Numbered from the stretch's first letter, positions 22,151 to 60,784 are shown. The stretch is 64,000 bases of DNA from Macrostomum lignano (GCA_002269645.1 NIVC01000073.1:806001-870000); one strand, 5' to 3'. Notes: generated by a model from the letters alone, not told the origin. Numbers and translations are program-made.

Positions 22151-22224
22151 CCACACAGTACAGAAAGCAGACCCTGACGCCATTGATGCTAAGGAAGCGA
22201 AATTATCGCATACTGAAACAAGTC

Positions 22225-29250: not shown

Positions 29251-32200
29251 TCTTAGGATGTTTTCTTTTTGCATTGCACTTCATCTGAGCAGTTTTTCTA
29301 TTGACTATGTGAAGGCTTTGTTTGGCCATCTTATTGATACTTGTAGAGAACAGAGATTCTATCTAGATGTCCCCCATCGGGGGGCGAAGATTGCTAGTCT
29401 AAATATACTAAATCTCTAATATTTGTATGCTTGTCCATAACGCTCTAGAGATTGCAATTCTTCACCGATTTTCATCGCGTGAAGAATTTCACCGATTTGT
29501 AATTAGCCCAGGATCGTATGGTTAAAATTTCTTTTATCTGCCTCAATGCTAAAGGGATTAAATATTCAAAAAACTGTTTTAAATAGGCTTTTTCATTGCA
29601 AATTTTATCAGCGAGAAACTTCACAGCCAATTTTAATTGATTGCGCCAGAGCAACTGCTAAGAAAACTCACTGGGCCCCACTTAAAGGGGGGAGAATAAA
29701 AAATTATTCTGGATGCTGGCAGCCAGCTCTAATTAGCTAGTCCGTCAATATCTATATTTATAATACTGAAAAGTTTAGATCAGTGCATTCTTTGCAACTG
29801 ACATGTCTAGTTACTCTAGTTCTGTGGTTGCTTCAGAAGTTGTCCAAAATTTTACTTCTGCAGTAAAGAAGTCAAATATTGTCTCAAATAAATAAATTGA
29901 ACTTGACTTGTCAGTACAATATTGTCGACTTTCAAAACCCTATACATTTGATTTAACATCAAGACTTAAATTCCATATCGTAGTCAGAGAATTTCGCATG
30001 TCTTGGAGCGACCAGCGGCGCTCTGCACCCTTGCCAGCTTCTCCCGCTTCTTCTCGCTCAGTGGAGGCAGGCTCGCAGGCCCGCCACCCCCAGCCTCTGC
30101 AGCTTCTGTTCCGCTCTTCGCCTGCCTACCAGCCGCCGCCTCAGCTCCGCTCTTCGCCTGCCCACCAGCCGCAGCCTCAGCTCCGATCTTCGCCTGCCCA
30201 CCAGCCGCAGCCTCAGCTCCGCTCTTCGCCTGCCCACCAGCCTCTGCCTCTGCCGCAGACGCCGGCACAATCTGCCGCAGTCTGGCGTGAAGCTCCTCGA
30301 ACTTTTCGCCGCGCCACGTCAGCTGGTCCTCCGCGTCCTTGTACATCTGCACGTAGATGAGCTGCGTGAGCGGCATCGACATCGGACCCTCGGGCGGCCA
30401 CGCCATCTTCTCCAGCATCACCGGAACGATCGGCTTGCGGATGGCGTCGGCGAGGCCCACCTCTCGCCTGCAGTTGGGCGAGGCGGCGTACTTGGGAGTG
30501 ACGAAGGCGACAACGACGCTGCAGCCGCGAACTCCGCGGTCGATCTTCTCGTAGAGCGAGTCGCCGCCTCCCATCTGGAAGATGTCCATCCAGCAGGTGA
30601 AGCCAAGACTGCACAGTCGAGAGTAGAGCGCCTTCACCTCTGACTGCTTGGACCACTGGTAGGACAGGAACACCTGCGGAGCGGCTGGCGGAGCGTCGCG
30701 GCTGTCGGCCGAGTCGGACTTGTCCTTGGCCTTGGCGTCCGTCTTGGAGGCCTCCTTCCGGTCGGGCAGCACGATGGTCTCGTCGGCGCTGGGCGGCTGC
30801 CACCAGTTCGCGTACTCTGTACTCACCGAGTCGTAGTCGGGCGCCACGGCCAACCGGATCTGAACCAGCAGCTCCATGAACTTGTCCGGCGGCCAGAACA
30901 CTCCACCGGAGCCGCGCCTTGCCGCTTCGATCGAACAAGCGGATGTACAGGTACTCGGTCAGCAGAGGTCCCATGGCTCCTTCCGGAGGCCAAGACACTC
31001 GCTCGAGCTGCACCGGGATCAGGTGCTTGTTCAGCGACACGGACAGGTTCAGCTGCAAATTGGAGATGAGCACGGGATGTATGTGTGAGCACACATGTAG
31101 CTACTCTACTGCAAGGATGAACTCAGGATGAACACGCTCACCTCTCGTCTGCAGTTGTCCGACTTGGAGTACTTGTCCGTCACGCACGCAATGACCACCT
31201 TGGCTGACCGAACTCCAGCATCGATAGCCGAGAACAGCTTGTCTCCGCCTCCCATCTGGCCAATGTCCATCCAGCAGCGATATCCGGCCTTCTCCAGGTG
31301 CTGCTTGAGCATCTTCACCTCGGCCTGGTGGCCCCACTGATAGCTGAGGAAGACGTTGCGAGGCGCCGTGAACTCGACCGGGTCGTCGGAGGCAGCGGAC
31401 TCTGAATGGAAGCGGCGAGCAGAGAACTCCGTTGTAGTATCAGTTATTCAATTAGCAACGATTGGTCTCTATTCAAGCTCAGATAGCTTGTACTCACCTG
31501 CGTTCAGAATGGACGCCTCGACAATGGCTGCTGCGTCAAGACGGTTCATCTCCTTGAGCTGCTGCAGCACAGCCTTGGACGCTTCCGCTGCTCGGTTGTT
31601 TGTGTAGAACTCGGCCAGCATACTCATACACGGGTCCGCAGTTGTGGCCCATGCTCGAATGTCGTCGGCCGAGAAGTTCAGTCTCTGAGCCAGCAGTCGC
31701 CAGTCAGTGTCGGACTCCGGGTTTATCAGTCGGGACACTTCGCGAGACCAGGCAGGAGCCGCGCTCAGAGTCTGTAGTGGAGTTGTAACTGCGAGTTGGC
31801 TTCTTTATCAACCATATGAGCCTACAGAAGGCTTCTTCTCAGCGACTCACCTTGAGATCGATCTCCTCGACCTTCTCGCCCAGCACGCCCACAGCGACAT
31901 TCAGCTCATCCACGCGGCCCTCCGTCGCGTCCACTCTGCCCCGAACTTGTCCGAGCTCGTCTCTGGTCTCGTCTACGCGACCCGACACCTCGTCGACTTT
32001 GTGTCCGGTGTCGCTCAAGTCTCGCTCGAGTCCGCCGATCTTGTCGCTCTGGTCGGTGATTTGGCCTTCCAGACCGACGAGCGAGCGGTTGGCGATCACA
32101 TCGAGTAGGTGGTTGCAGGCGTCGAGCAGAGCCGGGCTCGACTTCCAGTGCTTGATGTCGGACTCTCGCTCGGCCAGCAGCTGCGGACTGTCGACTCCGA

Positions 32201-35200
32201 CACTTCGCATCAGCGCGAGGCAGCTGGCCAGCTTTTCAGTCGCCGAATCCTTTTCAAGATAATGATTTACGACGTCAGTTATGGCTGTCATTAACTTGCA
32301 TGTACTGAATTTGCACTTTTCAATGGTATTCATCGCTGGAATGATGAGACTTATGTTGGACTTGGCCGCTTCTGCCAGTGTATCTAGGCAGTTTTCCATC
32401 ACAATACGCTGATCTTCACCAAGAAACCCAAGTCCTTCTAGCGCTGTAAATTGATGATCTCCTATCTTCTTGAGCATTTTGAGCATGTAATCGCGTAATT
32501 CATCGGGGCAGTGCTTGCTGTTGTGCTTGCAAGCGTGTGCGACCAAATATGTCAGTTGCGTATCGATGTTCAGAGTGCCATCCTGAAGGCTAATAAGCTG
32601 TGGAATTTGCTGCGCCAATGTGTCTGGCACCTCGTTGCGTGAACTGCTTTGCAGAGTGTCTGGAATGTACGGAGAGATGCTCTGAAATACTCATATTTTA
32701 CACAGTGTCTGTAAAGAGATGGTATTTAAATTTTACATATCAATCCAGGTGCCAAGCCGGTGTAAATTTCCGGTTGCTCTCTCTTCGTTCTTTTATACGT
32801 GTCCACTAGAAGAGGTAGATGCGGCAGAAAAGCAAACACGGTATCTGAGCTGTTGCCAAGGCAGTTGTTAAGCCCCAGCAAAACTCCGGTAGCCATGTCG
32901 CCTCGTGAGCTGCTGAAGAACCTGTCCACGGCTTTGGTGTACAGAGGAAATAGGTCCTTGTTGATTGTCACTAGCTACAGGTGTCAATTTTCAATTTAAT
33001 TTTTTAGTTTTACGAACGGAACTTTTGCAGTAAAATGCTTCGTAGCATGGGCTGATTGAAGTTATTTTTACCTTCGCAGCTTGTTGGAATCCAGCGGTTA
33101 GACTAACAACAACAGAGTGCAGTATTTGGCCTTCCAGAGTCAAGGTGTCACTGCCAGTTACGTCGGCTGTAGCCAATTCATTTTCAAGGCAGGTTTCCAG
33201 AAGTGGACGAAATTTCTCAAGTAGATTGCAAATGGTTTCTGGCGAGATCCTCCTGTTAATGAAAATTAGCGTCTTGATCAACTTACCTCTTGGAAGCTTC
33301 CAAGTAATTCTTTGTTGGGCTTTTAAGTCCAGCACTACAGCAGAGCATAGGTCGTGCATACTTCCTTTCGACTTGCGGTCAGACCTCATGGTAAATCTGT
33401 TTGCTACTTCCAGAGATGCCAATTTTTGCCTACTAGGCTGAAATAAAATTTAAAACATTAATGCGCCAATCTTACACCACATTGTCGATGAAATCGAGCG
33501 GTATTCTAAGAAACATGCTTCCATAGTTCAAAGTGTCGAGTGTAATAACTGGCTGTCGCACACACTGAACCATTGCGTCAAGGACAGCAGGTAGCTGGTC
33601 AGTCAGGTCCAGCCAGTTAAACATGTCGCACCGCCAGCCGCTCACGAGAATAGTTAAGCTTAGGCTGCGAACGGCTAGTAGCAGAATTTCGAGCAGCTTG
33701 AGCTGCATTGGTATCTGCCGGAGCATCGACTTTCCGGGCGATTGGCTAGAAAAAACACGAATCAATATGGAGGATTTTATTATAATTATCTTAGCTACCG
33801 ATCGAGCTAACAGATTTCAATACCTATAATTACCTATAACCTACAAATAATGAATCTAGTGGATATATTGGCTTCCTGAATATAAAGGCTTAGTGTGCTC
33901 AATAAGCGTCGTTATATAGCTATACACAGCCATCAAGTAGAGACCAATTTTTGAAAGGACACGGTCTGTTTGAGTATATCGGCTTCCTTTCGTACAGCAG
34001 TCGTGCGATTTGATCGCTGAGTTGATGTTGACTGCTTTTGATGCAACGCAAAATTATAATTTACGTTCTATAATTACGATCCTAACCTCTCAGCAAAAAC
34101 ATAAAAAAACAACTCAGCAAAGAAGAGAGTGAAGGTGACTCACAAGATGTTCATGATCAGCTTGTTGAAAAGGTCGCCCGCTCTGAAATCGAGGGCCTGA
34201 CCGGATGTGGCTCGTTTCGCCTCTTCGACTGACAACACTTCGGCCACGAACGCGTCAATGAAAAGCCATAACGCCGGTCGGAATGTCTGAAATGGTTGGG
34301 TTTGGCTTACCTTGAGTCCAATGCGTTAATATTTATTTAGAAATGCATGCGCGATAATACTACATGGATCAAGAGTGCAACGAAGTTGAAATCAAAGTAA
34401 CTGAAAATTTTAATGCAAGTAAAGCAAAACGCTGCCGGCTAGTCGCTTGAAAAGTTTAAAAGGAAAATCTTTACACACACTCAATCTAGCAATGAAAAAT
34501 TTTGACAAAGGTCTGCGTTTACCGGTTTGCAGACTTGCAGACTCCTCTTGCTGATGAACAAATCTATGAGAATTAAAAGCAATAGCATTACTTAAGAGGG
34601 CTCTATATATTAACTGCGTCATGGCACTTTGAGATGCTTTGCACTGAATTTTCTGTGGTTTGTGCTACTACTAGTTTTAGCTATTGACCTCATTGACACG
34701 GTCATCAAACTAAAAGACTTCGGGCGATTACAGACTTTTATAAAAGAGCCTTTACACTGTACTATATAGACCCTCATCTTTTTGCTTAACCTTGAAAATT
34801 GATTTTTGGATAAACGTTCGTCCGCTGATTCTCTCCATCACACGAGTGTTGCAAGCTTAGTAACAGGCTATGAGAACCGACGTAATACCAAATGTATATA
34901 AAAAACCCAGACATTAATTTTGTAAGTCTTAGTCAGCTAAAAGATTGAAGTCTGGTGTGCCAACAGTGACAACCATATGATTTCTATTTCTGACAAGTCC
35001 TGTCGGTACAGTACAGTACATTACACTTCAGTCTTAGCTACAGACTACAACGGAGCGCTAGTCTTATCAAGAGATCTTTAATACAAAAAACTTATTCAGT
35101 ACCTCAGCATTTCGCTGAATTAGTTTAATCCTGTCGCTGTCGATGTACATTTTTCTAAAGTACAAGTCGAACTCTGTGCTAGAGATGCGCATTAGGTTCA

Positions 35201-35365
35201 GGTAGGCGGGCATGCATTCGCTCAGCTCTTCAACGCTGGTCACAAGCTCGGGCATCAGGTTGCTGTACAACTGGCTGCGAATGTCCTTCAGTAGCTGCGG
35301 AACTGCAGCCAGCTTGCCGTTCTCATCCGGTGGAGGTGGCCTGATGAGCAAGAATCCTATGCTTC

Positions 35366-36420
35366 TGTTGTACCTGTGGTTGTCCTGCTGTACAGCGCAG
35401 TGACTTGGGCTCCGTCCTCTCACTTAGAAGCCTTCTTAACTTTAGTAGCGTAGGTATTGCTGCCACCAGTTCCTTCAGGTCTCGGCCTTCGGTGAGGTGA
35501 GCTTCCCGTCGGAACGAAATAATGAAGTCAACGAACACAGCACGACGTGCAGATTTGCAGCTCAACGTATAAGGCGTCTCGTCAGCAGCACCTGCCGGGC
35601 TTGGATGGTACAGGGAGGGCTGAGTTAGCCTCTCGTAGACTTGGATTGGTTTGGTCGGGTCTCAGTCGGAGCAATAGGAACAGAATCAATGTGCGCAAAG
35701 ACTCGGACACTCGGGACTTAGTCACACGCGGACGTAGAACTCGAGGTTGAACAGAAGGAAGACTCCTTGACGGAAACAAGGGGGAGAGGGCTCCTATTTA
35801 TAGCCGGGAAATTCCCACGCTCCAGACCTCGTGACTTGTTCTATTTTTAGAACTGACGTCACTCGAGAGTCTTGGGCAGGGTACAAGCGCGCGGAAGACC
35901 TCGTGACTTGTTCTATTTTTAGAACTGACGTCACTCGAGAGTCTTGGGCAGGGTACAAGCGCGCGGAAGACCTCGTGACTTGTTCTATTTTTAGAACTGA
36001 CGTCACTTGAGGTCCCCGGCCAGAGTACACGCGGCTGTGACTCAGTTGCTATTTTTAGCAACATGAGTCACTCCTCTCCTTAGAGAAGGGAAGGGTCCGA
36101 AAGCACGTGACTCACCCGGTAAACAGGGCCAACGAGTGCAGTAAACATGTTTACTGCACTTTAAGACTCAAAGAACGCAAGAACTGTCATGTGACTTGCT
36201 CACAAGACAGGGAAAACGGGACGGGAGCGAAACAGAGACAGCCCACAGTCGAGAGACTGAGGGCTGAGAACGGAAACGCAACAGGGCGGAAAGGACACGG
36301 GGGCAACAGGCAAGCGAAAGGAGGGCGGGAAGCTGACCAGCGGCAGACAGCAACCCAAAGGGAGGGCGAGGGAACGGCTGACAAGGGTGACGCCTAGCCA
36401 TAAACTAGCGGCTCACTACA
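35366..36420 (-). repeat. 3' LTR (1055 bp)
   Basis: Matches 44130-45184 at a constant offset of 8764. Confidence 0.97.
35795..36115 (-). promoter_or_regulatory. LTR U3 promoter: TATAAATA plus three 72-bp repeats each with TGACGTCA, and three TGA(C/G)TCA sites
   Basis: Repeat units start 35824, 35896, 35968; TATA on the minus strand at ~35795-35802; the same block is present at +8764 in the 5' LTR. Confidence 0.7.
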
Positions 36421-37137
36421 CTCTCCCCGTTCAAATAAAGAGGCGGAGTGAAGGCGGAGCGCGCCTTTATTTAAAAAGGTAAACTGCAGAAAATAAAATT
36501 TTGATTGGCAAAAAGGTGGTAACTTTGGCAGAATAGCAGAAGAGGGTGGGTCAGGCCCATGATTGCGACCCAAAACGCACGGCGGGGGCGCCTGCCCGCA
36601 TGAATTCAGCGCCTAAATACCGGGGTGCTTTAAATAATAGCAGGGCCCGTGGGGGAGAAAGGGGATACCTGAGCAGGTATGGGGACGTAAAAATAGAGGC
36701 CGCAATCGGACTTAAACGCGCGGCTGGGCGAGAGCCGTAAAACTGCCCCATACGGTATTAGTGGAACACACCAAATGCAGACGGGGGGCGCCAGCCCCAA
36801 GAAAGCAAGAAGCGCCTAAATACAAAGGGATGCGGGAGTTCTTGCAGAGCCCTGGGGAAGAAAAGCAAGGGACTGGCCAGAGGCCTTCAAAGGGTTATCA
36901 TCAGCTTGAGCACAAATGGCAAATGCTGCTCACAAAAGGAGAAAATTAAATGGCGCGATTGCGCAAAATTTGCACAGTTGCTATGGGCGCTAAGTCAGTG
37001 GCGCCGAAGGGTTTCGCACTAGGCTGCTTCCTAAAATCAATCAGTCCGCCCTGCCGCAGTTCATTATGATCTCGGGCACTGCCGGTGTGCGCCCAGCAAT
37101 TTGCCCAGCGATTAGCTGAGCTACAACGCGCGCTGTC

Positions 37138-40100
37138 TCAGGGTGCGGTGGTCGTCTGAGCGTGGGCTCGGCGAGTTGGTGAGTCCAAACCCGTCAGGTC
37201 GATGCAGACGGGAGCGGCAGTTCGCGGTCGGCGCTGCCCCTTGGCTTCGGGCTTGGTGTCGGTCGTGGCGGGCTTGGGTCGCTCCCGGCTGGTTTCTGCG
37301 GCCTCGCGTGCTTGGTCGGCCTCGACCTGGCGTCGGATTGTCGCGATTCCTTGGGCGACAGCTTCCGTGCTGGCTGTTGACGCAGCCGCCTGTCCTCCTG
37401 ATGAGGTTGGCGCTAGACGACGGACGACGGCCGGGTTCTCCGAGGGCGTCCCCTCGGCACCGGCGGTCCGGTTGTGCCCCGGTCGGCGTCGACGTCTGCG
37501 CCTCCTTGACGGGCGGTGGTTCTCCTCCGGCAGCGGCGTAGCTCCGCCGTCCTGGCGGAAGCCGAGCCGGAGCTGGGGAGGAATGCGATGAGCCTCTCGG
37601 TGCTCGCCAGATTCGAGCTGGCCGGCCGCTGCGCCGATCGGAGGCCCCGGTTCAACATAGTAACGGGGTCGATTGAGGCGAGCCTCAGTAGGCGGCGAGC
37701 GCTCAGTGCGCTTAGCAATACGGCGCGGTTGCATTTCTGCGCTGAAATTCGTTTTAGTTTGTGCGCGGATGCGGGCGGTGCGGCTAACGTAAGTTTTAGC
37801 CCTAGGATTAATAATCAGCCTCTCAGGCTGCCTACGGTTCCTAGCCGGCCTACCGGCATCTACAGTTCCTAATGACGCTTCCACCGGAGTGGTGCATAGC
37901 GACGGCCCAGGGGTCTGGACCACAGAAAAAGCAGCACTGGGGGCGGGAGCAGAAACGGGCGGAAAAGAAACAACAGGCGTAGACGCATCAAGAACAGGCT
38001 CATGCAAATGACATTCACCATACGGCACTGGCTCACGCCGAAGTGCACTTGCCTGGTTCGCTGGTGTCGTGACCGGTCCACCTCCTGGCTGCACCTCCGG
38101 GATCGCCAAAGGCCGGAAGTGCCATCGGAAGGCCGGCCTTGCGTCGTAGCCGTTATCATCATCGTCGTCGGGGTCGTCCTGGTCGTCCTCGGGAATCGGC
38201 GTCAGGGTCGCGGGTCCTGCGCCGTCGGGGACGTCGGGCGGTCGCCGACGCTTCTTCGGTTTGTCGACTTCAGGATCGGAAGTCCTCGTGTAATCGGCGT
38301 CAGGCACGAGTAGGAGGTTCCGGCGATGGACGATTAGTTCGTCTCGTCTGGCTCTCGGGTTGGGCAGTCTCCGTCGAATCTTGTAGACGACCTCGCCCTT
38401 GGGCTCGACGACTTCGTATAGGGCTTTGCGAGGTCGATGAAACTTCGCCGCCTCATCCGGTTCGAGTACCGGGTTGTTGAGGAAGACCAGATCGCCGGGT
38501 TGGAGCTTCTTGGCGACGGGCAGGTTCGAGTAGTGCTCGTCTCGCAGTTGCTGATGCAGATGCAGGCGCTCCTTGGCTAGCTCAGTCGCCTCGTCCAGGC
38601 GACGTTGGAAGTCCTTGACATAGTCGGGCAGGTTGGCATACTCGGGCAGCTTCTTTAGCGAGTTGTCGATCGGAAGTCGGAAGTCACGGCCGAACACCAG
38701 GTAGTGAGGCGTGAAACCTGTCACCGGGTGCACGCTGGAACGGAGAGCCATCAGACAAGCTGGGAGGAAGGTGTCCCAGTCGTTATGGTTGCGCTCGAGC
38801 AGACAGGTGAGGACACTCTTCAGCTGTTTGTTGAGGTTCTCGACTTGTCCGTTGGAAGCTGGATTGTACGGTGTTGTTGTCGTATGCCGAATGCCAAACA
38901 GGTCGCAGAACTTCTTGAAGGCGGAGCCGGTGAAGTTGGTGCCTTGATCGGTGTGAATCCAGCATGGTACACCGAACTCGGGGATGAAGCGCTCCTGCAG
39001 AAGCTTGATGACTGTTTTGGCTTTCTGGTTTCTCATCGGGTAGGCGAATGGATACTTCGACGTCGCATCGCACAAGGTCAGGATGTAGCGGTTGCCGCTC
39101 TTGCTCTTCTGCGCGATTGGTCCTACTACATCACAGTGGATTCTACCCAGAACTTCGCAAACTGGGAAGCTCTGGACCGGAACTCTCTCTCGCCGTCGCG
39201 ATTTACTTTCAAGGCAAGTGCGGCACTTACTGATGAAGGTCTTGGTAGCACGGGCTAATCCGGGTCTCCAGAACCGTTCTCGTAGCCGCAGTAACGTCTT
39301 CGTCTCGCCGAGGTGTCCACACAGTGGCGAACTGTGGAGCTCCTGGAGCACCTGGGCGTCAAGGGCCTCAGGCAGAACAACCTTTGGCGGCTGCTGGCCA
39401 TCGGACAGGTCAATCAGCAGCAGGCCGTTGTCCTCCTGCAGGTTCTCGTAGTATCCGAGCAGGTTCCGCTGCTCCTTCTTCAGTCGCAACCGGGCGTCGA
39501 ACTCAGGCTTCGGGGCTTCGTTCTCGACCAAGTTGAGCACGTAGCTGATGGCTCGATCAGCGCGCTGGGCTTCAACGAACTGTTGGCGAGTCATCGGCAG
39601 CTTCAGAAAATCAGTGAGCACAGCGCGGCATGGCTGAGGGGTCCGGATTCCCGCAGTCTCCGCTTTAATGGCTCCAGGTCGATCACACGGCACCGTCTTG
39701 TCGGCGTCAGGATTAGGTCGCTCCGAGGGACTTTGTCTCACAACGTCGGCGTACGTCCGTTGATCTCGATTCGAAGTTCTCTTCATCGCTCTCAAGACAG
39801 AAAAATCCGCAGATGGAGCAGCGCGCATGCCTCCACTGCATAGCACAGGCGACTCTTGGCTGTAGGGCGGGACGCAACACGTGAAGCACGCTTCGTCGCA
39901 GGCAGCCGTAGCCGTCGGCTCAGTCGTCGTCAAAATTGGGTGAGTCTTCTCCTGCACTGGGCGGTGTCGCAAAGGGGGACTCGACTTTCCGCACAGGCGA
40001 TGAGCAGCTGTCTGTCGGCCCGGGGGACAGAGCTTCGACCTTGCAGCTGGCGCGAGATTCTGGCCTCTGTCAACACGGCGAGAAATCCCAGCGAAAGGCT

Positions 40101-47390: not shown

Positions 47391-48285
47391 ACTCTCACCA
47401 CTCACCAAAATACTCTCACCACTCACCAAAATACTCTCACCACTCACCAAAATACTCTCACCAACTCCGATTAACCAGTGGGTGACATGCAAGCACAGGG
47501 AGAGTTGGGCTAACGCCCAAAACTGCCCATAGTCCAGCGCTGCCGCTCCCTGTCCCTCCCCTGCTTGGCACTCGGCCGCAGTGATGTCAGGGCGGTAACC
47601 ATGGCTCTCTCAGGTCGTGGCTGCTTCACTAAGCATCGCTACCTCCAAGGATGAAACCCGCAGTGAGGAATGCCCATTCTGCCTCTCACTCTGCCTTGGT
47701 CCGAACCCGGATCTTTCTCTGACTTTTTTAGTCCCGAGAATTTACCAGCTCGTCGGGTACCTAAGGTACCGCTGCGGACACCGGCACTACCAGATCTCCG
47801 GGCGCGGCACCGCAGCACTAGCTGACCGTGGTCTTTAGGGTTAAAGGAACGGTCGGCAACGCCCGAAAACCGTGCAGCACTCGAAAACGTATTTAATCTG
47901 CTTATATACCGTAGAATCCATTGCATGAAATCGGTAAAGAAAATGTTACAGCAGTTCGATTAGCTACCTGAACTTAGACAGCAGAAATGTGACGGTCAGG
48001 TCGCGCAGTCGGGACACCGCGTAGGCTCTGTCCTTCTCGTCTTCTGCCTCAGCTGTATTCGGCTCTTCGATTCTAACGTCTTTAATGGCCAGCAGCAGCT
48101 TACGGGCGCAGTCTGGGTCCTGTCGGGTGAGTTAGAAATCAGCTTCAGCTTGAGGAGTAGTACGCACTGTATTTTACCCTCGCAATGTCAGTAAAAAGAT
48201 CAATTCTTACAGGTTTTATCACACGTGAAATAAAAGACACGTTTCTATAGTGTCAATGTTAACATCAACTTCTGCTAATTTAGCA

Positions 48286-48590
48286 GGTGTTGTAGCCTTG
48301 TGGTTAGAGCGTCGGACTCGTGACTTGAAGGTTGGGGGTTCGATTCCTGATCCAACTGGAACAATTTGTGTCCTTGAGCAAGACACTTATAACTCTGCAT
48401 TGCTTCAGTTCACCCAGCTGTAAAATGGGTGCCAGCATTAGCTGGGGTAATTGAGGGTGTGTGGTGACCCCCCCCCCCAGTCATTGGACTGAACAGCCGT
48501 ACGCAGCCTTCAGATGCGCCGCGCAATAGCTGCGACTGAGCTGTCGGTTGCACGTCTGGCCATTAGGCCAGGTGTAATCAATTACTATTA
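48286..48590 (+). mobile_element. tRNA-derived CORE-type SINE
   Basis: A/B boxes (gtagccttgtggttag, ggttcgattcc) followed by a MIR-core-like tgtgtccttgagcaagacactt...cacccagctgtaaaatggg; short (tta) tail. Confidence 0.75.
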
Positions 48591-51880: not shown

Positions 51881-54800
51881 TCACAGAACGTTGCACGTCT
51901 TCGAGCGACCAGCGGCGCTCTGCACCCTCGCCAGCTTCTCCCGCTTCTTCTCGCTCAGCGGAGGGAGGCTCGAAGGCCCGCCAACCTCTGCAGCCTCCGC
52001 AGCCTCAGCTCCGCTTTTCGTCTGCCCACCAGACGCCGCTTCAGCTCTGCTATTCGCCTGCCCACCAGCCGCAGCCTCAGCTCCGCTCTTCACCTGCCCA
52101 CCAGCCGCAGCCTCAGCTCCGCTCTTCGTCTGCCCACCAGACGCCGCTTCAGCTCTGCTATTCGCCTGCCCACCAGCCGCAGCCTCAGCTCCGCTCTTCG
52201 CCTGCCCACCAGCCGCCGCCTCTGCCGCAGGCGCCGGCACAATCTGCCGCAGTCTGGCGTGAAGCTCCTCGAACTTTTCGCCGCGCCACGTCAGCTGGTC
52301 CTCCGCGTCCTTGTACATCTGCACGTAGATGAGCTGCGTGAGCGGCATCGACATCGGACCCTCGGGCGGCCACGCCATCTTTTCCAGCATCACCGGAACG
52401 ATCGGCTTGCGGATGGCGTCGGCGAGGCTTACCTCTCGCCTGCAGTTGGGCGAGGCGGCGTACTTGGGAGTGACGAAGGCGACAACGACGCTGCAGCCGC
52501 GAACTCCGCGGTCGATCTTCTCGTAGAGCGAGTCGCCGCCTCCCATCTGGAAGATGTCCATCCAGCAGGTGAAGCCGAGACTGCACAGTCGAGAGTAGAG
52601 CGCCTTCACCTCTGACTGCTTGGACCACTGGTAGGACAGGAACACCTGCGGAGCGGCTGGCGGAGCGTCGCGGCTGTCGGCCGAGTCGAACTTGTCCTTG
52701 GCCTTGGCGTCCGTCTTGGAGGCCTCCTTCCGGTCGGGCAGCACGATGGTCTCGTCGGCGCTGGGCGGCTGCCACCAGTTCGCGTACTCTGCACTCACCG
52801 AGTCGTAGTCGGGCGCCACGGCCAACCGGATCTGAACCAGCAGCTCCATGAACTTGTCCGGCGGCCAGAACACTCCGCCAGAGCCGGACGCCTTGCCGCT
52901 TCGATCGAACAAGCGGATGTACAGGTACTCGGTCAGCAGAGGTCCCATGGCTCCTTCCGGAGGCCAGGACACTCGCTCGAGCTGCACCGGGATCAGGTGC
53001 TTGTTCAGCGACACGGACAGGTTCAGCTGCAAATTGGAGATGAGCACGGCATGTATGTGTGAGCATGCATGTACTCTACAGCAAAGATGAGCTCAAACAG
53101 GCTCACCTCTCGTCTGCAGTTGTCCGACTTGGAGTACTTGTCTGTCACACACGCAATGACCACCTTGGCTGACCGAATTCCAGCATCGATGGCCGAGAAG
53201 AGCTTGTCTCCGCCTCCCATCTGGCCAATGTCCATCCAGCAGCGATACCCGGCCTTCTCCAGGTGCTGCTTGAGCATCTTCACCTCGGCCTGGTGGCCCC
53301 ACTGATAGCTGAGGAAGACGTTGCGAGGCGCCGTGAACTCGACCGGGTCGTCGGAGGCAGCGGACTCTGAATGGAAGCGGCGAGCAGAGAACTCCGTTGT
53401 AGTATCAGTTATTCAATTAGCAACGAGTGGTCTCTATTCAAGCTCAGATAGCTTGTACTCACCTGCGTTCAGAATGGACGCCTCGACAATGGCTGCTGCG
53501 TCAAGACGGTTCATCTCCTTGAGCTGCTGCAGCACAGCCTTGGACGCTTCCGCTGCTCGGTTGTTTGTGTAGAACTCGGCCAGCATACTCATACACGGGT
53601 CCGCAGTTGTGGCCCATGCTCGAATGTCGTCGGCCGAGAAGTTCAGTCTCTGAGCCAGCAGTCGCCAGTCAGTGTCGGACTCCGGGTTTATCAGTCGGGA
53701 CACTTCGCGAGACCACGCAGGAGCCGCGCTCAGAGTCTGGAGTGGAGTTGTAACTGCGAGTTGGCTTCTGAGCCTATGATATGAGCCTACAGAAGGCTTC
53801 TTCTCAGCGACTCACCTTGAGATCGATCTCCTCGACCTTCTCGCCCAGCACGCCCACAGCGACATTCAGCTCATCCACGCGGCCCTCCGTCGCGTCCACT
53901 CTGCCCCGAACTTGTCCGAGCTCGTCTCTGGTCTCGTCTACTCGACCCGACACCTCGTCGACTTTGTGTCCGGTGTCGCTCAAGTCTCGCTCGAGTCCGC
54001 CGATCTTGTCGCTCTGGTCGGTGATTTGGCCTTCCAGACCGACGAGCGAGCGGTTTGCGATCACATCGAGTAGGTGGTTGCAGGCGTCGAGCAGAGCCGG
54101 GCTCGACTTCCAGTGCTTGATGTCGGACTCTCGCTCGGCCAGCAGCTGCGGACTGTCGACTCCGACACGTCGCATCAGCGCGAGACAGCTGGTGAGCTTG
54201 TTAGCCTCTGAGTCTTGAGCAAGGTGATGATTCACAATCTCACACATGGACGTCATTAGTTTTGGTGCTTCAAACTTTCCTTTATCAATGGTAGTAATTA
54301 TGAGTGCTACAAGATCGATGTTAGATATCGCTGTCGTCACCAGCTGGTCTAAGGCTCCTGACATCACCTGCGGTTGATTTTCTGCTAGGGAAGCGAGGCC
54401 ACCCAGCGCAATAGCGGCGTATGGACCTTGCAGAAAGCTTAGCAGATAATCTCGCATCTTTTCGGCAGATTTGGCGCTGTTAAGTTTGCAGACAGTCCCA
54501 ATGAACTGAACCATCTGTACTTGCACGGTGTCTTCTCCCTCGCTTAGGCTGATTAGCTGGTCGACTCGGCTGGCTAGTTGATCCGGAATCTCCGTTTTCG
54601 CTGACAGTTGCAGGCATTCTGCTCGCAAAAGTTTTTTTAAGGAATGACTATTATCGTTTAGATTTAGATTTAGTTTTTCGAGTCAAAAAATGTTTGTGCA
54701 TTTACTCACGCAACAGTCCCACAAACAATGCTCCAAACATCTGAGAGCCCGCAGTCTTTTGCTCCTGTAGAAATTCCAACAGAAGCGGAAAATGCGGCAG

Positions 54801-57800
54801 AAACTGGAAAACCGTATCCGGGCTGTAGCCGAGGCAGGTTGTCAGACCAATCATTATTCCGCTTGTGCCAGACTCGGGATACTCATTGGTTTTCCGGCAC
54901 ATGCTGATGTACAGCGGGTAGAGCTCTTTGTTGATAGGCAGCATCTGACAATTTGGCAGCGGTATATAAAGTTTTGGGCATAGAAATTTGCATAGCAGTT
55001 GGTTGGCAAGTTTACATTTTAGAAATTGGTCATTTTTGGGGGGTCTGGCGCACATCAAGGAACGGATTGTAAGGACGAATGAAGACTTACCGTCTGAACA
55101 CTAGTTGCCGACATCAGGTTGCTGAGTAGATTGATCAATACGAGACCCTCGGCAGACAGAATTTCCGACCCGCTCATCATTGTCACCATGATGTCGCTAG
55201 TTAAGCAGGTTTCGATAATCTTGCGAAGACTTTCCATACTCTTGCACACAGTAGGTGGCTTGTTTTTTCTACGGTGGACAGAATATAGGTATTTCTGAAG
55301 CTGTCAAAAACTTTGTTGCCAGAAATTTAAAGTAGAAGAGTGGTATAGTAAGTAGGAAGTTATCCTACTAAAGAGAAGCAAAAAGATTTTGAATGGAATC
55401 TCTTGTAGTACTTAAAGTATATGTAATGAGTTCCTGACTCAGCCTTGACTACGTGTAGGGACTCAAAAACCGGTCCTGTCCTGTTCGGCCCCTTGCTTGG
55501 ACTCAACCGCAGGGATGTCAGGGCGGTAACCATAGCCCTCTCAGGTCATGGCTGCTTCGCTAGGCATTGCTACCTCTAGGGGAAATCCGCAGTGAGGAAT
55601 GCCAGTTCTATCGCTCCAGTGTTGACAATGTAGAGCACTTCATCTGTGAATACCCCACCTTTACTTAGGATGCGGAAAGCAGATGATAAAACATGGCTTT
55701 AATGCTTCTCACATCATAAACAAGATGAAGTCTACTGGGATCACGGCGAACCCGATACCGTAGTGCACGCTCTCAATAGTAGTGAAGTTATCATTCAGAA
55801 ATGCCTCAAGCATATCCAGATTTTCTTGAAAACGATCTTGCAGCGCCGGCCAGTTGAAAATTTCCTTGTCAAAGCCGCGTATTGCGCCGAGAAGGCAAAG
55901 ACTTCGACTGGACACCATCTTCTGCATGACTTCAAACAGCTTTGCCTGGGTAACTTTCTCATGCACGATCTTCTTGCCGGGTGATTTGCTAAAACAATAA
56001 ATCAGTTTCGAATATCGAATAATTCTTTCAAAGATACTACAAACCGCAAAGTAGATAACTATATCAAGGACTCCAGTAGGGTCAGTCAAGTTGAAGCGTG
56101 GCTTGTAATCAAGCAAATCGAATCGACTCTCACACACTCTCGACATGATTAGGGCTTAACTATCAACCTCACTGACATAAGAAACACTACTCGTACTATC
56201 GCATCCATCACTTACTAAAGCTTTTCAATCATTTTCTCCAGAATGGAAGCCAGCTTTTGCACCGGTCCGTATATCAACGGGTCACCCTGCTTGTCCTCGG
56301 GCACAGACTCGTCTAGTTTTGTCAGAGCGTTGGCGCACTCTTCGATGAACAAAATGAAAGCCGGTTGAAATTTCTGAAAAAGTTTTTTGTTGAGTACAAA
56401 AAAAGTATTTTTACTTTCAGTAGTTCAGTAGTAAACCTAATTTAACGCTGCTATACACATTAAAACTTGGGGTCGAACCTCGGGAACAAAACGACAAGGA
56501 TGCAAAAAGGTAATATTATCAAACTCACTGCAGCGTTCAACTGAATGAGCTTCAGCTTAGCATTGTCAAAGTACATTTTTTCAATGCTTTCGACAAACTG
56601 CTTGAAGGACACGCTCAGCAGCTTTACATACAACGGCATGCACGAGGCCATGTCCTCAACTGTAGTTGCAGCACTTGGCAACAGTTTTTGGAATAGCTCG
56701 TATCGAGCCTCCTTGAGTATCTCGTCCTCCGGTGTCAACTCCTCATCATCTGATTTATTGGGACGTTGCATGATGAGGTCGATGTTAGCTTTGCCCGAGA
56801 CCAACTCGCTAAGGCTTGATGTGTCCTGAAAGTTAGAACGAGTTTTATTGCCCATTGAAGACTCGAGCTTCAATAAAAGTGTTCTAATAGCTTAAAAACA
56901 CATTAATGAATATTAATGAGATTGGGCCTGCCCCTTAGGCTAAGTTTCGTCCGTCTGACTTTTACATCTCTCCTTACTGCTCTCTCATTGGCTGAGCCAG
57001 ATTGGGCCTGCCCCCTAGGCTGAGAGTTTCGTCCGTCTGACTTTTACCTCTCTCCTTACTGCTCTCTCATTGGCTAAGCCGGATTGGGCCTGCCCCCTAG
57101 GCTGAGTTTCGTGAGTTGTTTATTTTTGTTCATTTATTGATAACTGTGTTGTTAATTCTCAACCCATACGCTCTGAAGCCGCAGACCATGAAGGAAAAGA
57201 CACTTGAGCTGCCAAAATTTAAATGACAATGCGCAGACGAGCTACTAATAAAAGAGTAGGTGCTTAGTCTAGTACGAGTATTTTGGAGTTAATTCTTGGA
57301 AACTGGCATAAATCGCAAGGCAGTGGGCCCTGTAGGCCAATAGAAAAGTCAGGGTTAGTGCTTGTTTCTTGTTTCCTCACTGACTTGCAGTTCGACTGTC
57401 GCTTTGATTTTAAGAAGCAAGTTAAGCCCTGCGATCTTAGTCTCTTGTGTAGGTGGGTTTTTTATCGCCGAGAACAGATTTGCCTGTTTTTCAGATGACC
57501 TTATACCTGTTGCAATCCTAGCCAACTCTTCAAAATACCGTATGAGTTCCTACTGAATGCTCGGCCTCGTGTACTCACCGCCAGTGTATATTTCTTGCTA
57601 ATTGCCAATTCAGTGAGGCGTCGCAGCAAAAAACCGCCTGACTTCGACGTCTTTTTGTTGCTCAACAGCTTGAAGCATGCTTGGTAGGCATCGTTGAACA
57701 GGTACTTGAAATCGACGTCCTTTGTGGCGCTGTGTGTCATAGAACAATTGAACATGAGTCATTATATGTGCCGAATGCATAAAACTTAGAATAAAAAACT

Positions 57801-60784
57801 GCACTTCTCAGTCTACATGCATCTCATTGGTTCTGAATAGGGGCGTGATTGTACTCGTAGCTAAACTTAACTTAAAAAGGGTCTCCTAACGGACGAGCGT
57901 ACGACCGCTCACGATTAGCGCCATCGCCTTCTCAATAAAACTTACTGTATACTATGGCAAGTGTCTTTACTTTCTACTCGCATAATTGCTATCCGAACCA
58001 ACTGTGTATTGACTTGAGCCATCTTTGGCCGCTGAGCTACTGAGGGCAATGTAAACCGGCCTTAAGAGTGCAGTGCCGGGCCCAACTCTTACAGCGTACT
58101 GTGATACAGCATCTTTTGGAACCAGTTCAAATTCTGGCTTTTTAGCCTCACCAAAGCGCCGAGCCGAAGCTCGTGACGACTCTGTCGAGTCTATCAGCGG
58201 CATCATCTGACAGGTCCGAACTGGCTGCCGAATCCAAGGCTCCGAGTAGCCGTCGCATGAAGGCGTCGTCTTTGGCGTAGAACTGAAATTTCGTAGATTT
58301 CGTCGATAGGCTTTGTTTGATACCAGCCAACAGTAATATTAAATAAGCAAGCCACTGACTACTTACAGTAGAAGGACGATGCACGAAAAATCGTGCAAGT
58401 TCTACTTCTTGAGACCCAAAAATATATTAGCGAAATAAAGAACTTTTGTTCTAGGCACTGAATTAATCGTTTACCTTAATTAGTTCCCTAAATCAACCTT
58501 AAGCAAACAAATGTCATTTATTTACATGAACAATTGACGAACTCATAGGAGCCGATTGGCTGCTCTCCAGCTTCCTGCCCAGGCAGCCGAGGGCGAAGGC
58601 CCAATAGGATCGAATCTCGTCGTACTCCGCCCCGCCGTGACTGACGTAGTCCAGGTAGAGCGCCTGGATTTCCTCCGTGTTTTCTAGTGCAACTTCGTCG
58701 CTGAAAATTGCATAAGGGATGAATTAGTTGAGTTAGTTACGGCTCGTAGATTCTAATCCCAAGTTACGAGTATCTAACACTGCTCAAAGTTATTCGAGGC
58801 AATCATCAACAACCAAGTGATCTGTGCTCTGCGCTGGCTTCCAGGAGCCAAAAAAGTTCAAAAGAAAGACGAGATCGTCCGATCTGCCTTGAGAGTTTTT
58901 CTATTTTCAGTATCTCTGCGTTTTTTCAGGTTAACAGTAAAACCCCCTGAAATTTTTTCCGTCAAGAGCACAGACTAACTTCTTGTTGCACACCTTCTCA
59001 AACAAGAATCAAGTCGCCAGCCGCCTCCTGTCCGTCGAGATATTCAAAAAATCTTGAGCACCTGGACCTGGACCTGAACCTGGACCTTCATCAGGCACCG
59101 CATGCAGGTGACTATATGTACACCGTAGATTGCGAATTTCTTTGTGTTGTGCATGCGGACTGCACGCCGCCTAGAATTCTTGCGTTCTGATTGGCTGGGG
59201 GGTTTGTTTGTCTGCCCAGACCGGCCAAGGCCGGGGGGGTTGATGTTTGCTGAATCATGCTGGTTAGAAGTTTAACTATAATATAAGTGCGCACCGGCCT
59301 TCCAAGCCTTTGTGACTTTTTCTACCCTGCAATCACTTCTCGCATCTTATTCATTTGGCCTCAAAGCACAACACTTTGGTGTCGCTGACCAAGCTTTAAC
59401 AATGGGCAAATCTGAACTGCTGGACGTCATTGGCTAGTTAGTATCAGCTAGTCTATTAAAGATTGGTAAGCGACATCAAAGATATTTACAGTTCGTCAGA
59501 CGGAAAAAATGGCTTGGCATTCCTAATGTTAAACCTTCGCAGATGTCTCTAGTGCTGAGAATTACATGTATCAAGTTTCGAGCTTATATGCAAGCCACCT
59601 GTTTTAACACTCACCTGAGATTGTCCAGCATGGTTGAAACAGTGTGGCTCCGCATCTGCGAGACTGCCAAGCTTCTTTCATCGGCGTCGGCTTTAATTCT
59701 AGCTTTACGAATCGTCTGCAAAAGCTGCTTAGCAAAGTTGGGCTCCTGAAATTGTGCGCAACAATAAAAAGCGTTTCTGTTTTGATCTACTAACAGTAGT
59801 CTGTCACTAAATCGCATACGCAGTGCAAATTATCGCTTACATTAAACGTCAAATCTTTAAAGGTCTGTCGCAAATCGGACCAGACATCCGTTGTGAATCC
59901 GCTGGCGCCGTGTGCGAAACAGGCGCAGTAGGCAGACCAGACCGCTTGCCGAAGGTTTGGCAGCCACTCCTTGTGATTTTTTCTGCATGGTATCAGAGTG
60001 GCGAGGTTTTGTTCGTCAGAGACTTATAAGTGTTTGTCTGAGGTTCTGACTCTTACTCTGTCTCGATACCTGCTATCTCACTCAGCCAGCCAATCCAGGT
60101 ATCTCCACTCGACTCTAAAAAACTGTCCCAGGTGTCTCAGTCTACAATTTCTCACTCAACTATCCCAGGCATCTCACTCTACTATTCCAGGCATCTCACT
60201 CTACTGTTCCAGGTGTCTCACTCTACTATTCCAGGTGTCTCACTCTACTATCCCAGGTGTCTCACTCAACTGTTCCAGGCATCTCAATCTACTATTCCAG
60301 GCATCTCACTCTACTGTTCCAGGTGTTTCACTCTACTATTCCATATGTCTCACTCTACTATTCCATATGTCTCACTCTACTATCCCAGGTGTCTCATTCT
60401 ACTATCCCAGGTATCTCACTCTACTATTCCAGATATCTCACTCTACTACGACTACCCTAGGTTTCTCACTCTACTATCCATGTGTTTCACTCAACCAGCA
60501 TATGCCACAGGTGTCTGACTCAGCCAGCATAGATCTCAGGTGTCTTACACTGCATCCCGCATATGCACGATCGTTCTCAGCACACAATAGTATCCGGGTG
60601 AATGTCTTTTCGGCCAAAAACCCGGCCCCTTGGCCATGCAGTCGCAGATTGCTCGCAGAACATTTTCTACGTCTTTCTGGGTAAGATTCGCAGCCGGGAA
60701 GTGCTGGTCATAGTATTTTAAAAGTTCATTGTCACTGTCGTTTGTCTGGGACTTCAAGTCCAAGCTGGCGAAATGAGCATCCAT
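51881..60784 (-). CDS. Paralogue B: helical solenoid-coiled coil-Death-TIR-TIR-CaaX protein (~15 exons, very roughly 1500 aa), apparently intact
   Basis: Checked exons: 60549-60784, 59841-59982, 59615-59745, 53816-~54610, 53463-53736 (Death: TDWRLLAQRLNF...LKEMNRLDAAAIV), 53107-53366 and 51881-53026 (two TIR_2 units: VFLSYQW...WMDI.QMGGGD...S.NCRRE). Other exons approximate (58540-58700, 58150-58290, 57580-57730, 56530-56830, 56240-56380, 55715-55990, 55085-55250, 54710-55000). Ends CNVL*. Confidence 0.8.
60130..60480. repeat. 22-bp minisatellite (ccaggtgtctcactctactatt) in intron 1 of paralogue B
   Basis: Tandem copies visible. Confidence 0.93.

What the first reader, a model, noticed from the sequence alone, without database searches (positions are those of the whole stretch)
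29984..60784. Tandem pair of giant solenoid-Death-TIR-TIR proteins: a SARM1-like NADase immune module with Death instead of SAM
Seen: two paralogues with about 1000 aa of predicted helical N-terminus, a heptad coiled coil, a Death domain and two TIR_2-type domains. Each TIR keeps a Glu in S.NCRRE (SDNCRRE, SPNCRRE). Known: the equivalent Glu is catalytic in the NADase TIRs of SARM1, plant NLRs and bacterial Thoeris; SARM1 uses ARM for autoinhibition and SAM for oligomerisation. Inference: a variable sensor coupled to an oligomerising, NAD-cleaving effector, i.e. a possibly uncharacterised invertebrate immune or cell-death receptor family.
Basis: partly seen in the sequence, partly recalled or inferred. 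Interest (0 to 1): 0.85.

Follow-up and report, generated by a model that had tools for sequence, protein, structure and literature searches.

The report
Flatworm Death–TIR–TIR gene pair
Two neighbouring flatworm genes encode large proteins with a helical-repeat front end, a coiled coil, a Death domain, two SARM1-like TIR domains and a lipid-anchor signal; one copy is intact, the other is broken, and the family is widespread in invertebrates but has never been studied functionally.

Summary
On the minus strand lie two paralogues with an alpha-helical (HEAT-like) N-terminus of about 890 aa, a heptad coiled coil, a Death domain and two TIR_2 domains. Both TIRs keep S.NCRRE.

The window is Macrostomum lignano. 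Gene B (51881-60784, 15 exons, 1530 aa) is intact and matches GenBank 'hypothetical protein BOX15_Mlig018443g1'.

Gene A (29984-50009) is broken twice. A young 9.8-kb Ty3/Gypsy element sits inside exon 7, and a 2-bp deletion removes TIR2.

The family is conserved at 40-52% identity in molluscs, an annelid, hemichordates, echinoderms and amphioxus, always named 'uncharacterized'.

A profile of its TIRs matches Cat1 and SARM1 far better than TLR-type TIRs. The Glu aligns with SARM1 E642, but the Trp that SARM1 and Cat1 carry just upstream (SARM1 W638) is an invariant Asn here.

- a conserved C-terminal CaaX prenylation box
- a p75NTR-like Death domain
- a sharp gene-conversion tract that keeps the two effector halves about 98% identical while the N-termini share only 38%
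- the pseudogenisation of A

NADase activity is plausible but unproven. The protein is not a SARM1 or MyD88 family member. It is a new architectural variant of TIR signalling proteins, of moderate to high interest.

The parts
51881..60784 (-). Gene B, intact. 15 exons, 1530 codons plus stop. Exons: 60784-60549, 59982-59841, 59745-59615, 58700-58526, 58282-58152, 57729-57579, 56825-56529, 56373-56216, 55988-55713, 55268-55091, 54944-54710, 54618-53816, 53736-53463, 53366-53107, 53026-51881.
   Evidence: Model built from A/B exon conservation and splice-site phase. All 14 introns are GT..AG. Identical to GenBank BOX15_Mlig018443g1 (P0051, 1518 aa, partial) apart from my 12 extra N-terminal residues.
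54038..60784 (-). Gene B N-terminal alpha-helical (HEAT-like solenoid) region, residues 1 to about 897 (exons 1-12a).
   Evidence: The AlphaFold2 model has about 50 helices and almost no strand, mean pLDDT 66 (75-92 for model residues 660-880). Best Foldseek matches are karyopherin-beta proteins, CAND1 and SF3B1, E about 1e-6 but TM only 0.2-0.36. No Pfam family matches.
53816..54037 (-). Heptad coiled coil, residues about 898-971, with repeats of the type xVDExxx.
   Evidence: Hydrophobic autocorrelation peaks at 7. One continuous helix in both models. Weak hits to coiled-coil Pfam families.
53463..53736 (-). Death domain exon, residues 972-1062.
   Evidence: Pfam Death E=7e-8 on the exon. 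Six-helix bundle, pLDDT about 90. The family profile is closest to the p75NTR death domain (4e-9), then NRADD, UNC5 and MyD88 (2e-3).
52811..53328 (-). TIR1, residues about 1076-1221, split by intron 14 directly after the Glu codon. BB loop WMDIGQMGGGD at 53206-53238; Asn at 53119-53121; Glu1149 at 53107-53109.
   Evidence: TIR_2 E=6e-19. YQW..Q, W.D.GQMGGGD and S.NC..E are invariant in 44 sequences. pLDDT 85-92.
52235..52654 (-). TIR2, residues about 1274-1413. BB loop WMDIFQMGGGD at 52532-52564; Asn at 52445-52447; Glu1347 at 52433-52435.
   Evidence: TIR_2 E=4e-24. S.NCRRE is at least 90% conserved. The Glu aligns with SARM1 E642 and the Cat1 Glu.
51884..52234 (-). Low-complexity tail of 12-aa AEAAAGGQ.KSG repeats, then a basic stretch and the CaaX box CNVL (51884-51895).
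   Evidence: Sequence. Repeat number differs between A, B and P0049. 40 of 44 homologues end in C-x-x-(L/I/V/M/S), usually preceded by K-S-K/S-T/S.
29984..50009 (-). Gene A, a disrupted paralogue. Exons: 50009-49774, 49373-49229, 48119-47968, 46619-46442, 46123-45981, 45880-45718, 45225-45185 [retrotransposon] 35361-35103, 34286-34144, 33745-33476, 33252-33072, 32974-32737, 32659-31851, 31771-31498, 31401-31142, 31052-29984.
   Evidence: Exon-by-exon colinearity with B, with the same intron phases. No gene is called over exons 1-6 in the GenBank record.
35366..45186 (-). Ty3/Gypsy LTR retrotransposon inserted in exon 7 of gene A. LTRs 35366-36422 and 44130-45186; gag ORF 43168-44187; pol ORF 37138-42594; target-site duplication GAAG.
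   Evidence: The LTRs are 99.9% identical over 1057 bp. RVT_1, RNase H, integrase zinc-binding and core domains occur in that order.
30914..30915 (-). 2-bp deletion in gene A relative to B. It shifts the frame between TIR1 and TIR2.
   Evidence: DNA alignment; translation; coordinate.
29984..32240 (-). Gene-conversion or recent-copy tract of gene A, matching B 51881 to about 54195. It covers the end of the solenoid, the coiled coil, Death, TIR1, TIR2 and the tail, introns included.
   Evidence: Identity steps from 45-50% to 97-100% within about 100 bp. Introns are 90-99% identical. pS 0.056, pN 0.0135, pN/pS 0.24.

Best explanation
Shown:
- The window is Macrostomum lignano DNA.
- It holds one intact and one recently inactivated copy of a conserved invertebrate gene family.
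- The product is a HEAT-like alpha-solenoid (about 890 aa, fast-evolving), a heptad coiled coil, a p75NTR-type Death domain, two tandem TIR domains of the SARM1/prokaryotic type that each keep the catalytic-position Glu, a disordered repeat tail, and a polybasic CaaX box (CNVL).

Inferred mechanism:
- The protein is geranylgeranylated and sits on the cytosolic face of a membrane.
- The solenoid holds it in an off state, or binds a ligand or partner.
- On activation, the coiled coil (and possibly the Death domain) clusters the tandem TIRs. The TIRs then form head-to-tail TIR assemblies.
- These assemblies cleave NAD+ or make an ADPR-type signal. The Death domain recruits a further death-fold partner.
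- In logic this is a SARM1-like, TLR-independent stress, injury or immune switch. In membership it belongs to neither SARM1 nor MyD88.

Gene A lost function through a Gypsy insertion and a frameshift after its effector half had been homogenised with B by gene conversion.
For: Architecture.

Identity with GenBank BOX15_Mlig018443g1 and contig NIVC01000073.1.

Family conservation: 44 relatives in 6 phyla, E down to 1e-186, with invariant YQW..Q, W.D..QMGGGD and S.NC..E.

TIR type:
- Profile against the PDB gives Cat1 2e-8, SARM1 4e-7, PdTIR 1e-6 and AbTir 3e-6, against TLR2 0.78.
- The Glu is aligned to SARM1 E642.
- SARM1-like D594, G601, Y568 and the W-P after beta-D are also matched.
- Foldseek ranks SPARTA TIR and SARM1/TIR-1 first.

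CaaX is present in 40 of 44 homologues.

Flatworms lack TLRs (PMC10279657; PMC7958881), which argues for a TLR-independent role.

pN/pS is 0.24 in the shared effector half.

The N-terminus is 38% identical between A and B, and a 202-aa conserved stretch of it has no relative outside Macrostomum at E<1e-10 among 1.8 billion representatives.
Against: - No assay exists for any member.
- The aromatic residue four positions before the Glu (SARM1 W638, Cat1 Trp) is an invariant Asn in both TIRs. W638A lowers SARM1 kcat 100- to 400-fold (PMC8266388).
- SARM1 R569, R570 and F603 have no counterpart in the alignment.
- Many TLR TIRs also keep a Glu in W-C-x-x-E without being NADases (my own knowledge, not tested here).
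- Inter-domain geometry in the models is unreliable (pTM 0.37 and 0.44).
- Prenylation, oligomerisation and autoinhibition are inferred from sequence only.
Confidence: 0.45

Rival explanations
1. It is a non-enzymatic scaffold. A prenylated, membrane-resident 'sorting plus signalling' adaptor uses its TIRs only for TIR-TIR recruitment and its Death domain to bring in death-fold kinases or other partners. This would be a fused TIRAP/MyD88-like logic, or a negative regulator such as amphioxus bbtTIRA/bbtTIRC.
For: - The Death-then-TIR order is the same as in MyD88, and the MyD88 death domain is a detectable relative (E=2e-3).
- Lipid anchoring of TIR adaptors is an established theme (my own knowledge; Drosophila MyD88 C-terminal localisation domain cited in PMC7075850).
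- CaaX is conserved.
- The Trp equivalent is lost.
- Novel amphioxus TIR adaptors act as regulators of NF-kB signalling (PMC6043800).
Against: - The TIR profile does not list the MyD88 TIR at E<=1 and barely finds TLR2 (0.78), while it finds SARM1 and bacterial NADases.
- The BB loop is QMGGGD, not the RDxxPG Box 2 of the signalling TIR groups described in PMC7075850.
- Flatworms have no TLRs to adapt.
- The Glu is invariant over about 600 My in both TIRs, which a pure scaffold would not obviously need.
Confidence: 0.35
2. It is a true SARM1 orthologue, or a SARM1 paralogue in which Death replaced SAM.
For: SARM1 is among the best sequence and fold matches for the TIRs. There is an N-terminal helical repeat region.
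Against: - No SAM domain and no ARM Pfam match.
- Two TIRs instead of one, plus a coiled coil, a Death domain and a CaaX box.
- TIR identity to SARM1 is only about 15-22%.
- The bacterial-type protein Cat1 scores better than SARM1.
- Planarians have a separate SARM gene (PMC7958881).
Confidence: 0.03
3. Neither copy is functional; the locus is decaying duplicated DNA in a polyploid genome.
For: Gene A is disrupted twice. The locus is rich in repeats and transposons.
Against: - Gene B has an uninterrupted 4593-nt spliced ORF with 14 canonical introns.
- Its model matches an independent GenBank annotation.
- Near-identical intact copies exist elsewhere in the species (P0049, 1579 aa; P0045).
- All family-invariant residues are kept.
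- pN/pS is 0.24.
Confidence: 0.03

Closest known systems
SARM1 / TIR-1 (ARM-SAM-SAM-TIR NAD+ hydrolase)
   Same: - Large helical-repeat N-terminus, then an oligomerisation module, then a C-terminal TIR.
- The TIR is of the bacterial-like type (profile E=4e-7).
- The Glu aligns with E642.
- Equivalents of Y568, D594 and G601, and the W-P after beta-D, are matched.
- Likely TLR-independent.
   Different: - No SAM; a coiled coil plus a Death domain instead.
- Two TIRs.
- The solenoid is HEAT/karyopherin-like, and no ARM family is detected.
- Asn in place of W638.
- C-terminal CaaX instead of an N-terminal mitochondrial signal.
- About 15-22% TIR identity.
MyD88 (Death-TIR adaptor)
   Same: The Death domain lies directly N-terminal to the TIR. 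There is a distant death-domain similarity (E=2e-3).
   Different: - The TIR is not of the TLR/MyD88 type: no RDxxPG Box 2, and no sequence hit.
- Five times larger, with a second TIR, a solenoid, a coiled coil and a CaaX box.
- The death domain is closer to p75NTR/NRADD/UNC5.
Prokaryotic enzymatic TIRs (Cat1, AbTir, PdTIR, SPARTA TIR-APAZ, ThsB)
   Same: - Best sequence matches (Cat1 2e-8) and best fold matches (SPARTA).
- Shared F.S(Y/H), W.D...G and S..C..E pattern.
- Weak ThsB_TIR Pfam hits.
   Different: - Eukaryotic multi-domain context.
- Trp replaced by Asn.
- Glycine-rich QMGGGD BB loop.
Uncharacterised 'lower metazoan' TIR groups: group 18 of Toshchakov & Neuwald 2020; eukaryote-only clades of the 2026 TIR atlas; the ecTIR-DC families of Gerdol et al. 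2017
   Same: Invertebrate cytosolic TIR proteins with unusual architectures, absent from the model organisms, and of unknown function.
   Different: I could not determine which named group, clade or ecTIR-DC family this one is. Gerdol 2017 is not held and no group membership lists were consulted.
p75NTR / NRADD death domains
   Same: Closest solved relatives of the family's Death domain (4e-9 and 6e-5).
   Different: Those are C-terminal domains of transmembrane receptors. Here the domain is internal and fused to TIRs.

Membership tests
SARM1 family | Tandem SAM domains that build the octamer | tested here: not met
   No SAM hit in Pfam at E<=0.05 on the 1530-aa protein. A coiled coil and a Death domain occupy that position.
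SARM1 family | N-terminal ARM-repeat autoinhibitory domain | tested here: inconclusive
   An all-helical solenoid is predicted, with best fold matches to HEAT proteins. No ARM Pfam hit. The model has low to moderate confidence.
SARM1 family | TIR with the catalytic Glu (E642) at the aligned position | tested here: met
   Profile-to-SARM1 alignment...ancr....rEv... against ...DCKdwvhKEI....
SARM1 family | Trp638 next to the active site | tested here: not met
   W638 lies in a 4-residue SARM1 insertion, or aligns to an invariant Asn. Against Cat1 the Asn aligns to the Trp.
Enzymatic (NAD+-cleaving) TIR domains | Glu-dependent NAD+ hydrolase or cyclase activity | not testable with these tools
   Needs biochemistry.
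Enzymatic (NAD+-cleaving) TIR domains | Closer in sequence to known NADase TIRs than to scaffold TIRs | tested here: met
   Cat1 2e-8, SARM1 4e-7, PdTIR 1e-6 and AbTir 3e-6, against Hydra TRR2 0.07 and TLR2 0.78, with MyD88 absent.
Enzymatic (NAD+-cleaving) TIR domains | A self-association module that can cluster the TIRs | tested here: met
   A heptad coiled coil of about 75 aa plus tandem TIRs. Oligomeric state was not tested.
MyD88 family | Death domain followed by a TIR carrying Box 2 (RDxxPG) | tested here: not met
   The domain order is met. The BB loop is D-I-G/F-Q-M-G-G-G-D. The Box 2 definition is from PMC7075850.
MyD88 family | TIR and Death domains most similar to those of MyD88 | tested here: not met
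   The MyD88 TIR is not listed at E<=1. The MyD88 death domain scores 2e-3 against p75NTR at 4e-9.
CaaX-prenylated proteins | Cys at position -4 from the C-terminus, with aliphatic residues and a terminal L/M/S and so on | tested here: met
   B ends CNVL and A ends CEIL. 40 of 44 homologues end in CxxX, mostly with L. The modification itself is not testable here.
Ty3/Gypsy LTR retrotransposons (the insertion in gene A) | Two LTRs, a target-site duplication, and a pol with RT, RNase H and integrase in that order | tested here: met
ecTIR-DC families (Gerdol et al. 2017) | Assignment to one of the numbered families by architecture and phylogeny | not tested
   The paper is not held. Only secondary mentions were read.

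The most novel reading that the evidence does not exclude
The family is a second, SARM1-independent lineage of animal NAD+-processing TIR enzymes. It is membrane-anchored by geranylgeranylation. The tandem TIR1-TIR2 pair forms a built-in asymmetric active-site dimer, with an Asn-for-Trp pocket and a Gly-rich BB loop. This pocket yields a different nucleotide product or substrate preference. The Death domain couples the output to a death-fold pathway, and a rapidly diversifying HEAT solenoid acts as the sensor. Gene conversion keeps the effector constant while the sensors diverge, as in NLR clusters.
Probability: 0.2. Interest if true: 0.85.

Novelty: new variant of a known kind. Interest (0 to 1): 0.6.

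Why it matters
SARM1 is the best-established enzymatic TIR protein in animals, and it comes from model organisms that carry few TIR types.

This family is conserved from flatworms to amphioxus. It has two SARM1/bacterial-type TIRs that keep the catalytic-position Glu, a death-fold domain and a lipid anchor. It persists in a phylum without Toll-like receptors.

It is therefore a concrete, tractable candidate for a second animal TIR effector pathway. RNAi and transgenesis exist for M. lignano (my own knowledge).

If it is enzymatic, it extends NAD+-based immune or cell-death signalling in animals. If it is not, it shows that a strictly conserved 'catalytic' Glu and a SARM1-like fold do not predict activity, which matters for how TIRs are annotated.

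The locus also gives a clean example of effector-module homogenisation by gene conversion next to a diverging N-terminus, and of very recent gene death by a Gypsy insertion.

Tried and rejected
- tblastn and a family HMM against the six-frame translation found only the last 260 aa or so of the solenoid and the effector half. The first 640 aa or so are too divergent, so exons were mapped through A/B comparison instead.
- The word-index protein search failed to return the 100%-identical GenBank protein with the C-terminal query. It returned nothing for gene A's N-terminus. Its negatives are therefore not evidence of absence.
A 202-aa contiguous exon stretch was used instead.
- Aligning gene A exon fragments to B with MAFFT scattered them, so that alignment was not used.
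- Literature searches for ecTIR-DC, Death-TIR-TIR, bbtTIRA/C and the Mlig locus tags gave no functional study of this family. Gerdol 2017 could not be read.
- I considered that A and B might be haplotypes or assembly duplicates. I rejected this because the N-termini are only 38% identical.
- I considered an intron at the A frameshift site. I rejected this because B reads straight through the same sequence.
- No further family members occur on either strand of the window.

Full report
**What is in the window**

The region is eukaryotic, with multi-exon genes on the minus strand. Stop-to-stop reading frames and Pfam scans of single exons show three domains in each of two places:
- a Death domain (E=7e-8)
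- a first TIR_2 domain (6e-19), split by an intron
- a second TIR_2 domain (4e-24)

A self-comparison of the window shows that 29984-32293 and 51881-54258 are 93% identical overall. It also shows two 1057-bp direct repeats, 35366-36422 and 44130-45186, that are 99.9% identical.

**Gene models**

Protein-level comparison of the two upstream regions gave twelve colinear exon blocks. Enumerating phase-compatible GT/AG pairs gave, at every junction, the same phase and the homologous position in both copies.

Gene B (60784 to 51881) is a 15-exon, 4593-nt open reading frame encoding 1530 aa. All of its introns are GT..AG.

An exhaustive HMMER search with a contiguous exon stretch, cluster look-ups and a word-index search identified the organism and the annotation:
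- The product is identical to GenBank 'hypothetical protein BOX15_Mlig018443g1, partial' of Macrostomum lignano, apart from 12 extra N-terminal residues in my model.
- It lies on contig NIVC01000073.1 of GCA_002269645.1.
- Two further B-type copies of 96-98% identity exist in the species: PAA93690.1 (1579 aa) and UniRef A0A1I8I651.

The exon chain is thus confirmed by an independent annotation.

**Gene A is broken**

The direct repeats are the LTRs of a Ty3/Gypsy element. It has a gag ORF and a pol ORF with RVT_1, RNase H, integrase zinc-binding and integrase core domains. It starts TG and ends CA, and has a GAAG target-site duplication.

Removing the element and one copy of the duplication restores an open exon 7 that aligns with B's exon 7. 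The insertion lies 13 codons into that exon.

In the last exon, A lacks 2 bp that B has (next to 30915). The frame shifts after ...FDRSGKA and never reaches TIR2 or the C-terminus.

No gene is called over A's exons 1-6 in the GenBank record.

The near-identical LTRs, and the otherwise open reading frame, indicate recent inactivation. A sequencing error at the 2-bp site cannot be excluded. The retrotransposon insertion alone disrupts the coding exon.

**Gene conversion**

Nucleotide identity between A and B jumps within about 100 bp, near A 32240 and B 54195. Upstream it is 45-50%. Downstream it is 97-100%, and this continues through exons and introns to the stop codon.

Upstream, the proteins share 38% identity. 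In the shared tract pS is 0.056, pN is 0.0135 and pN/pS is 0.24.

The effector half has therefore been homogenised or recently copied, while the N-termini are old and divergent.

**Architecture of the protein**

| Part | Evidence |
|---|---|
| Pfam on the whole protein | TIR_2 twice (1.1e-46) and Death (2.1e-6); nothing N-terminal |
| C-terminal 543 aa, AlphaFold2 with 44 homologues | mean pLDDT 78: one long helix, a six-helix Death fold (pLDDT about 90), TIR1 and TIR2 (85-92), joined by a disordered linker |
| Long helix | heptad periodicity |
| N-terminal 959 aa model | almost wholly helical, about 50 helices, mean pLDDT 66; 75-92 in the stretch shared with other phyla |
| Fold matches of the N-terminal model | karyopherin-beta proteins, CAND1 and SF3B1, E about 1e-6 but TM only 0.2-0.36 |

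A HEAT-like solenoid is thus supported at moderate confidence.

The protein ends in a 12-aa repeat tail, a basic stretch and CNVL. Gene A's downstream frame ends CEIL.

**The family**

44 relatives were found, most about 1000-1280 aa when full length, with E down to 1e-186 and 40-52% identity over the effector half. They come from bivalves, gastropods, an annelid, hemichordates, echinoderms and amphioxus. All are named uncharacterized, hypothetical or 'Death domain-containing'.

Conserved features:
- YQW..Q, W.D.GQMGGGD and S.NC..E are invariant in TIR1 and at least 90% conserved in TIR2.
- TIR2 orthologues are 55-66% identical to B's TIR2, while TIR1 sequences are 46-51% identical to it. The TIR duplication therefore predates the phyla.
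- 40 of 44 relatives end in a CaaX box, mostly C-x-x-L after K-S-K-T.

The N-terminus is not alignable beyond its last 260 aa or so. The conserved 202-aa stretch has no relative outside Macrostomum at E<1e-10 among 1.8 billion representatives.

**What kind of TIR**

A profile of 16 family TIRs was searched against all PDB sequences:

| Match | E-value |
|---|---|
| Cat1 | 2e-8 |
| SARM1 TIR | 4e-7 |
| PdTIR | 1e-6 |
| AbTir | 3e-6 |
| SPARTA TIR-APAZ | 2e-5 to 1e-4 |
| Hydra TRR2 | 0.07 |
| TLR2 | 0.78 |
| MyD88 TIR | not listed |

In the printed alignments the family's Glu pairs with SARM1 E642 and with the Glu of Cat1's WCWDE motif. Equivalents of SARM1 Y568, D594 and G601, and the W-P after beta-D, are also matched.

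The Trp (SARM1 W638, Cat1 Trp) corresponds to the invariant Asn, or falls in a SARM1-specific insertion. W638A lowers SARM1 kcat by 100- to 400-fold (PMC8266388).

Foldseek ranks SPARTA and SARM1/TIR-1 first. MyD88, TLR1, IL-1RAcPb and plant TIRs follow within two orders of magnitude.

The BB loop lacks the RDxxPG Box 2 of the signalling groups (PMC7075850).

**The Death domain**

The family profile is closest to the p75NTR death domain (4e-9). NRADD (6e-5), UNC5 (5e-4) and MyD88 (2e-3) follow.

**Context from the literature**

- Flatworms lack canonical TLRs but keep TIR proteins, including SARM and MyD88 (PMC10279657; PMC7958881).
- Surveys have noted architecturally diverse 'lower metazoan' TIR groups (PMC7075850).
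- Several eukaryote-only TIR clades are described as not characterised to date. The same source warns that TIR_2 is not a subtype, and that close relatives of an active NADase can be inactive (bioRxiv 10.64898/2026.04.30.722052).
- ecTIR-DC families are described as conserved invertebrate TIR proteins of hypothesised adaptor or regulator function (PMC6321704). I could not read the primary paper.
- No functional study of this family was found.

**Interpretation**

Shown: the architecture, the conservation, the TIR type, the alignment of the Glu, the CaaX box, the state of both genes, and the conversion tract.

Inferred: membrane anchoring by geranylgeranylation; clustering through the coiled coil; regulation or sensing by the solenoid; NAD+-directed catalysis by the clustered tandem TIRs; and partner recruitment by the Death domain.

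I put the enzymatic model at about 0.45 and a purely scaffolding, membrane-resident adaptor or regulator at about 0.35. Both SARM1 and MyD88 membership fail on defining features.

The analogy to SARM1 is reasonable. The family membership, the 'pair' of working genes, and the sufficiency of the Glu are not supported.

Noticed in passing
window 35366-45186: An apparently intact, very young Ty3/Gypsy LTR retrotransposon. Its LTRs are 99.9% identical, and it has a 339-aa gag ORF, an 1818-aa pol ORF and a GAAG target-site duplication.
   Followed up: yes
window 3637-6792; 11956-12937; 18842-20010; 20538-21022; 21683-22150; 24619-24986; 25370-25819; 26283-26650: Several tandem-repeat arrays, with units of roughly 451 bp, 71 bp, 56 bp and others. 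The 18842-20010 array lies inside long ORFs that encode repeats such as LLGQPPRVSVAGPASQSVSCWAS.
   Followed up: no
window 22183-27232 (+): A neighbouring multi-exon gene. One exon has a flavodoxin domain (Flavodoxin_1, 8e-25), and the last exon ends ...RYKEDVWS. It looks like a diflavin reductase (MTRR/NDOR1-like).
   Followed up: partly
window 400-858 (-): An exon with a glycosyltransferase DXD sugar-binding region (Gly_transf_sug, 1.2e-8).
   Followed up: partly
window 6673-8853 (+): A 726-aa uninterrupted ORF with no Pfam match. Its C-terminus has about 25-aa repeats (ANPAKSRQAAAAKKRKAETAVDQAK). It might be a mobile-element protein.
   Followed up: partly
window 47549-47680 and 55480-55609; 23179-23409 and 50329-50594: Short dispersed repeats (84% and 78% identical). 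The first pair is shared between non-homologous introns of genes A and B. They are probably small transposable elements.
   Followed up: no
window 51997-52225 and 30087-30253: The 36-bp (12-aa) AEAAAGGQ.KSG repeat before the CaaX box varies in copy number between gene A, gene B and the paralogue PAA93690.1.
   Followed up: partly
window 61400-64000 (-): GC-rich stretch (up to 60% GC) with several 100-190-aa open frames upstream of gene B. No gene is called here in the part of the GenBank record that was read.
   Followed up: no
(tool behaviour): The word-index protein search did not return the 100%-identical GenBank protein for the C-terminal query, and returned nothing for gene A's N-terminus. 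Negative results from it should not be read as absence.
   Followed up: yes
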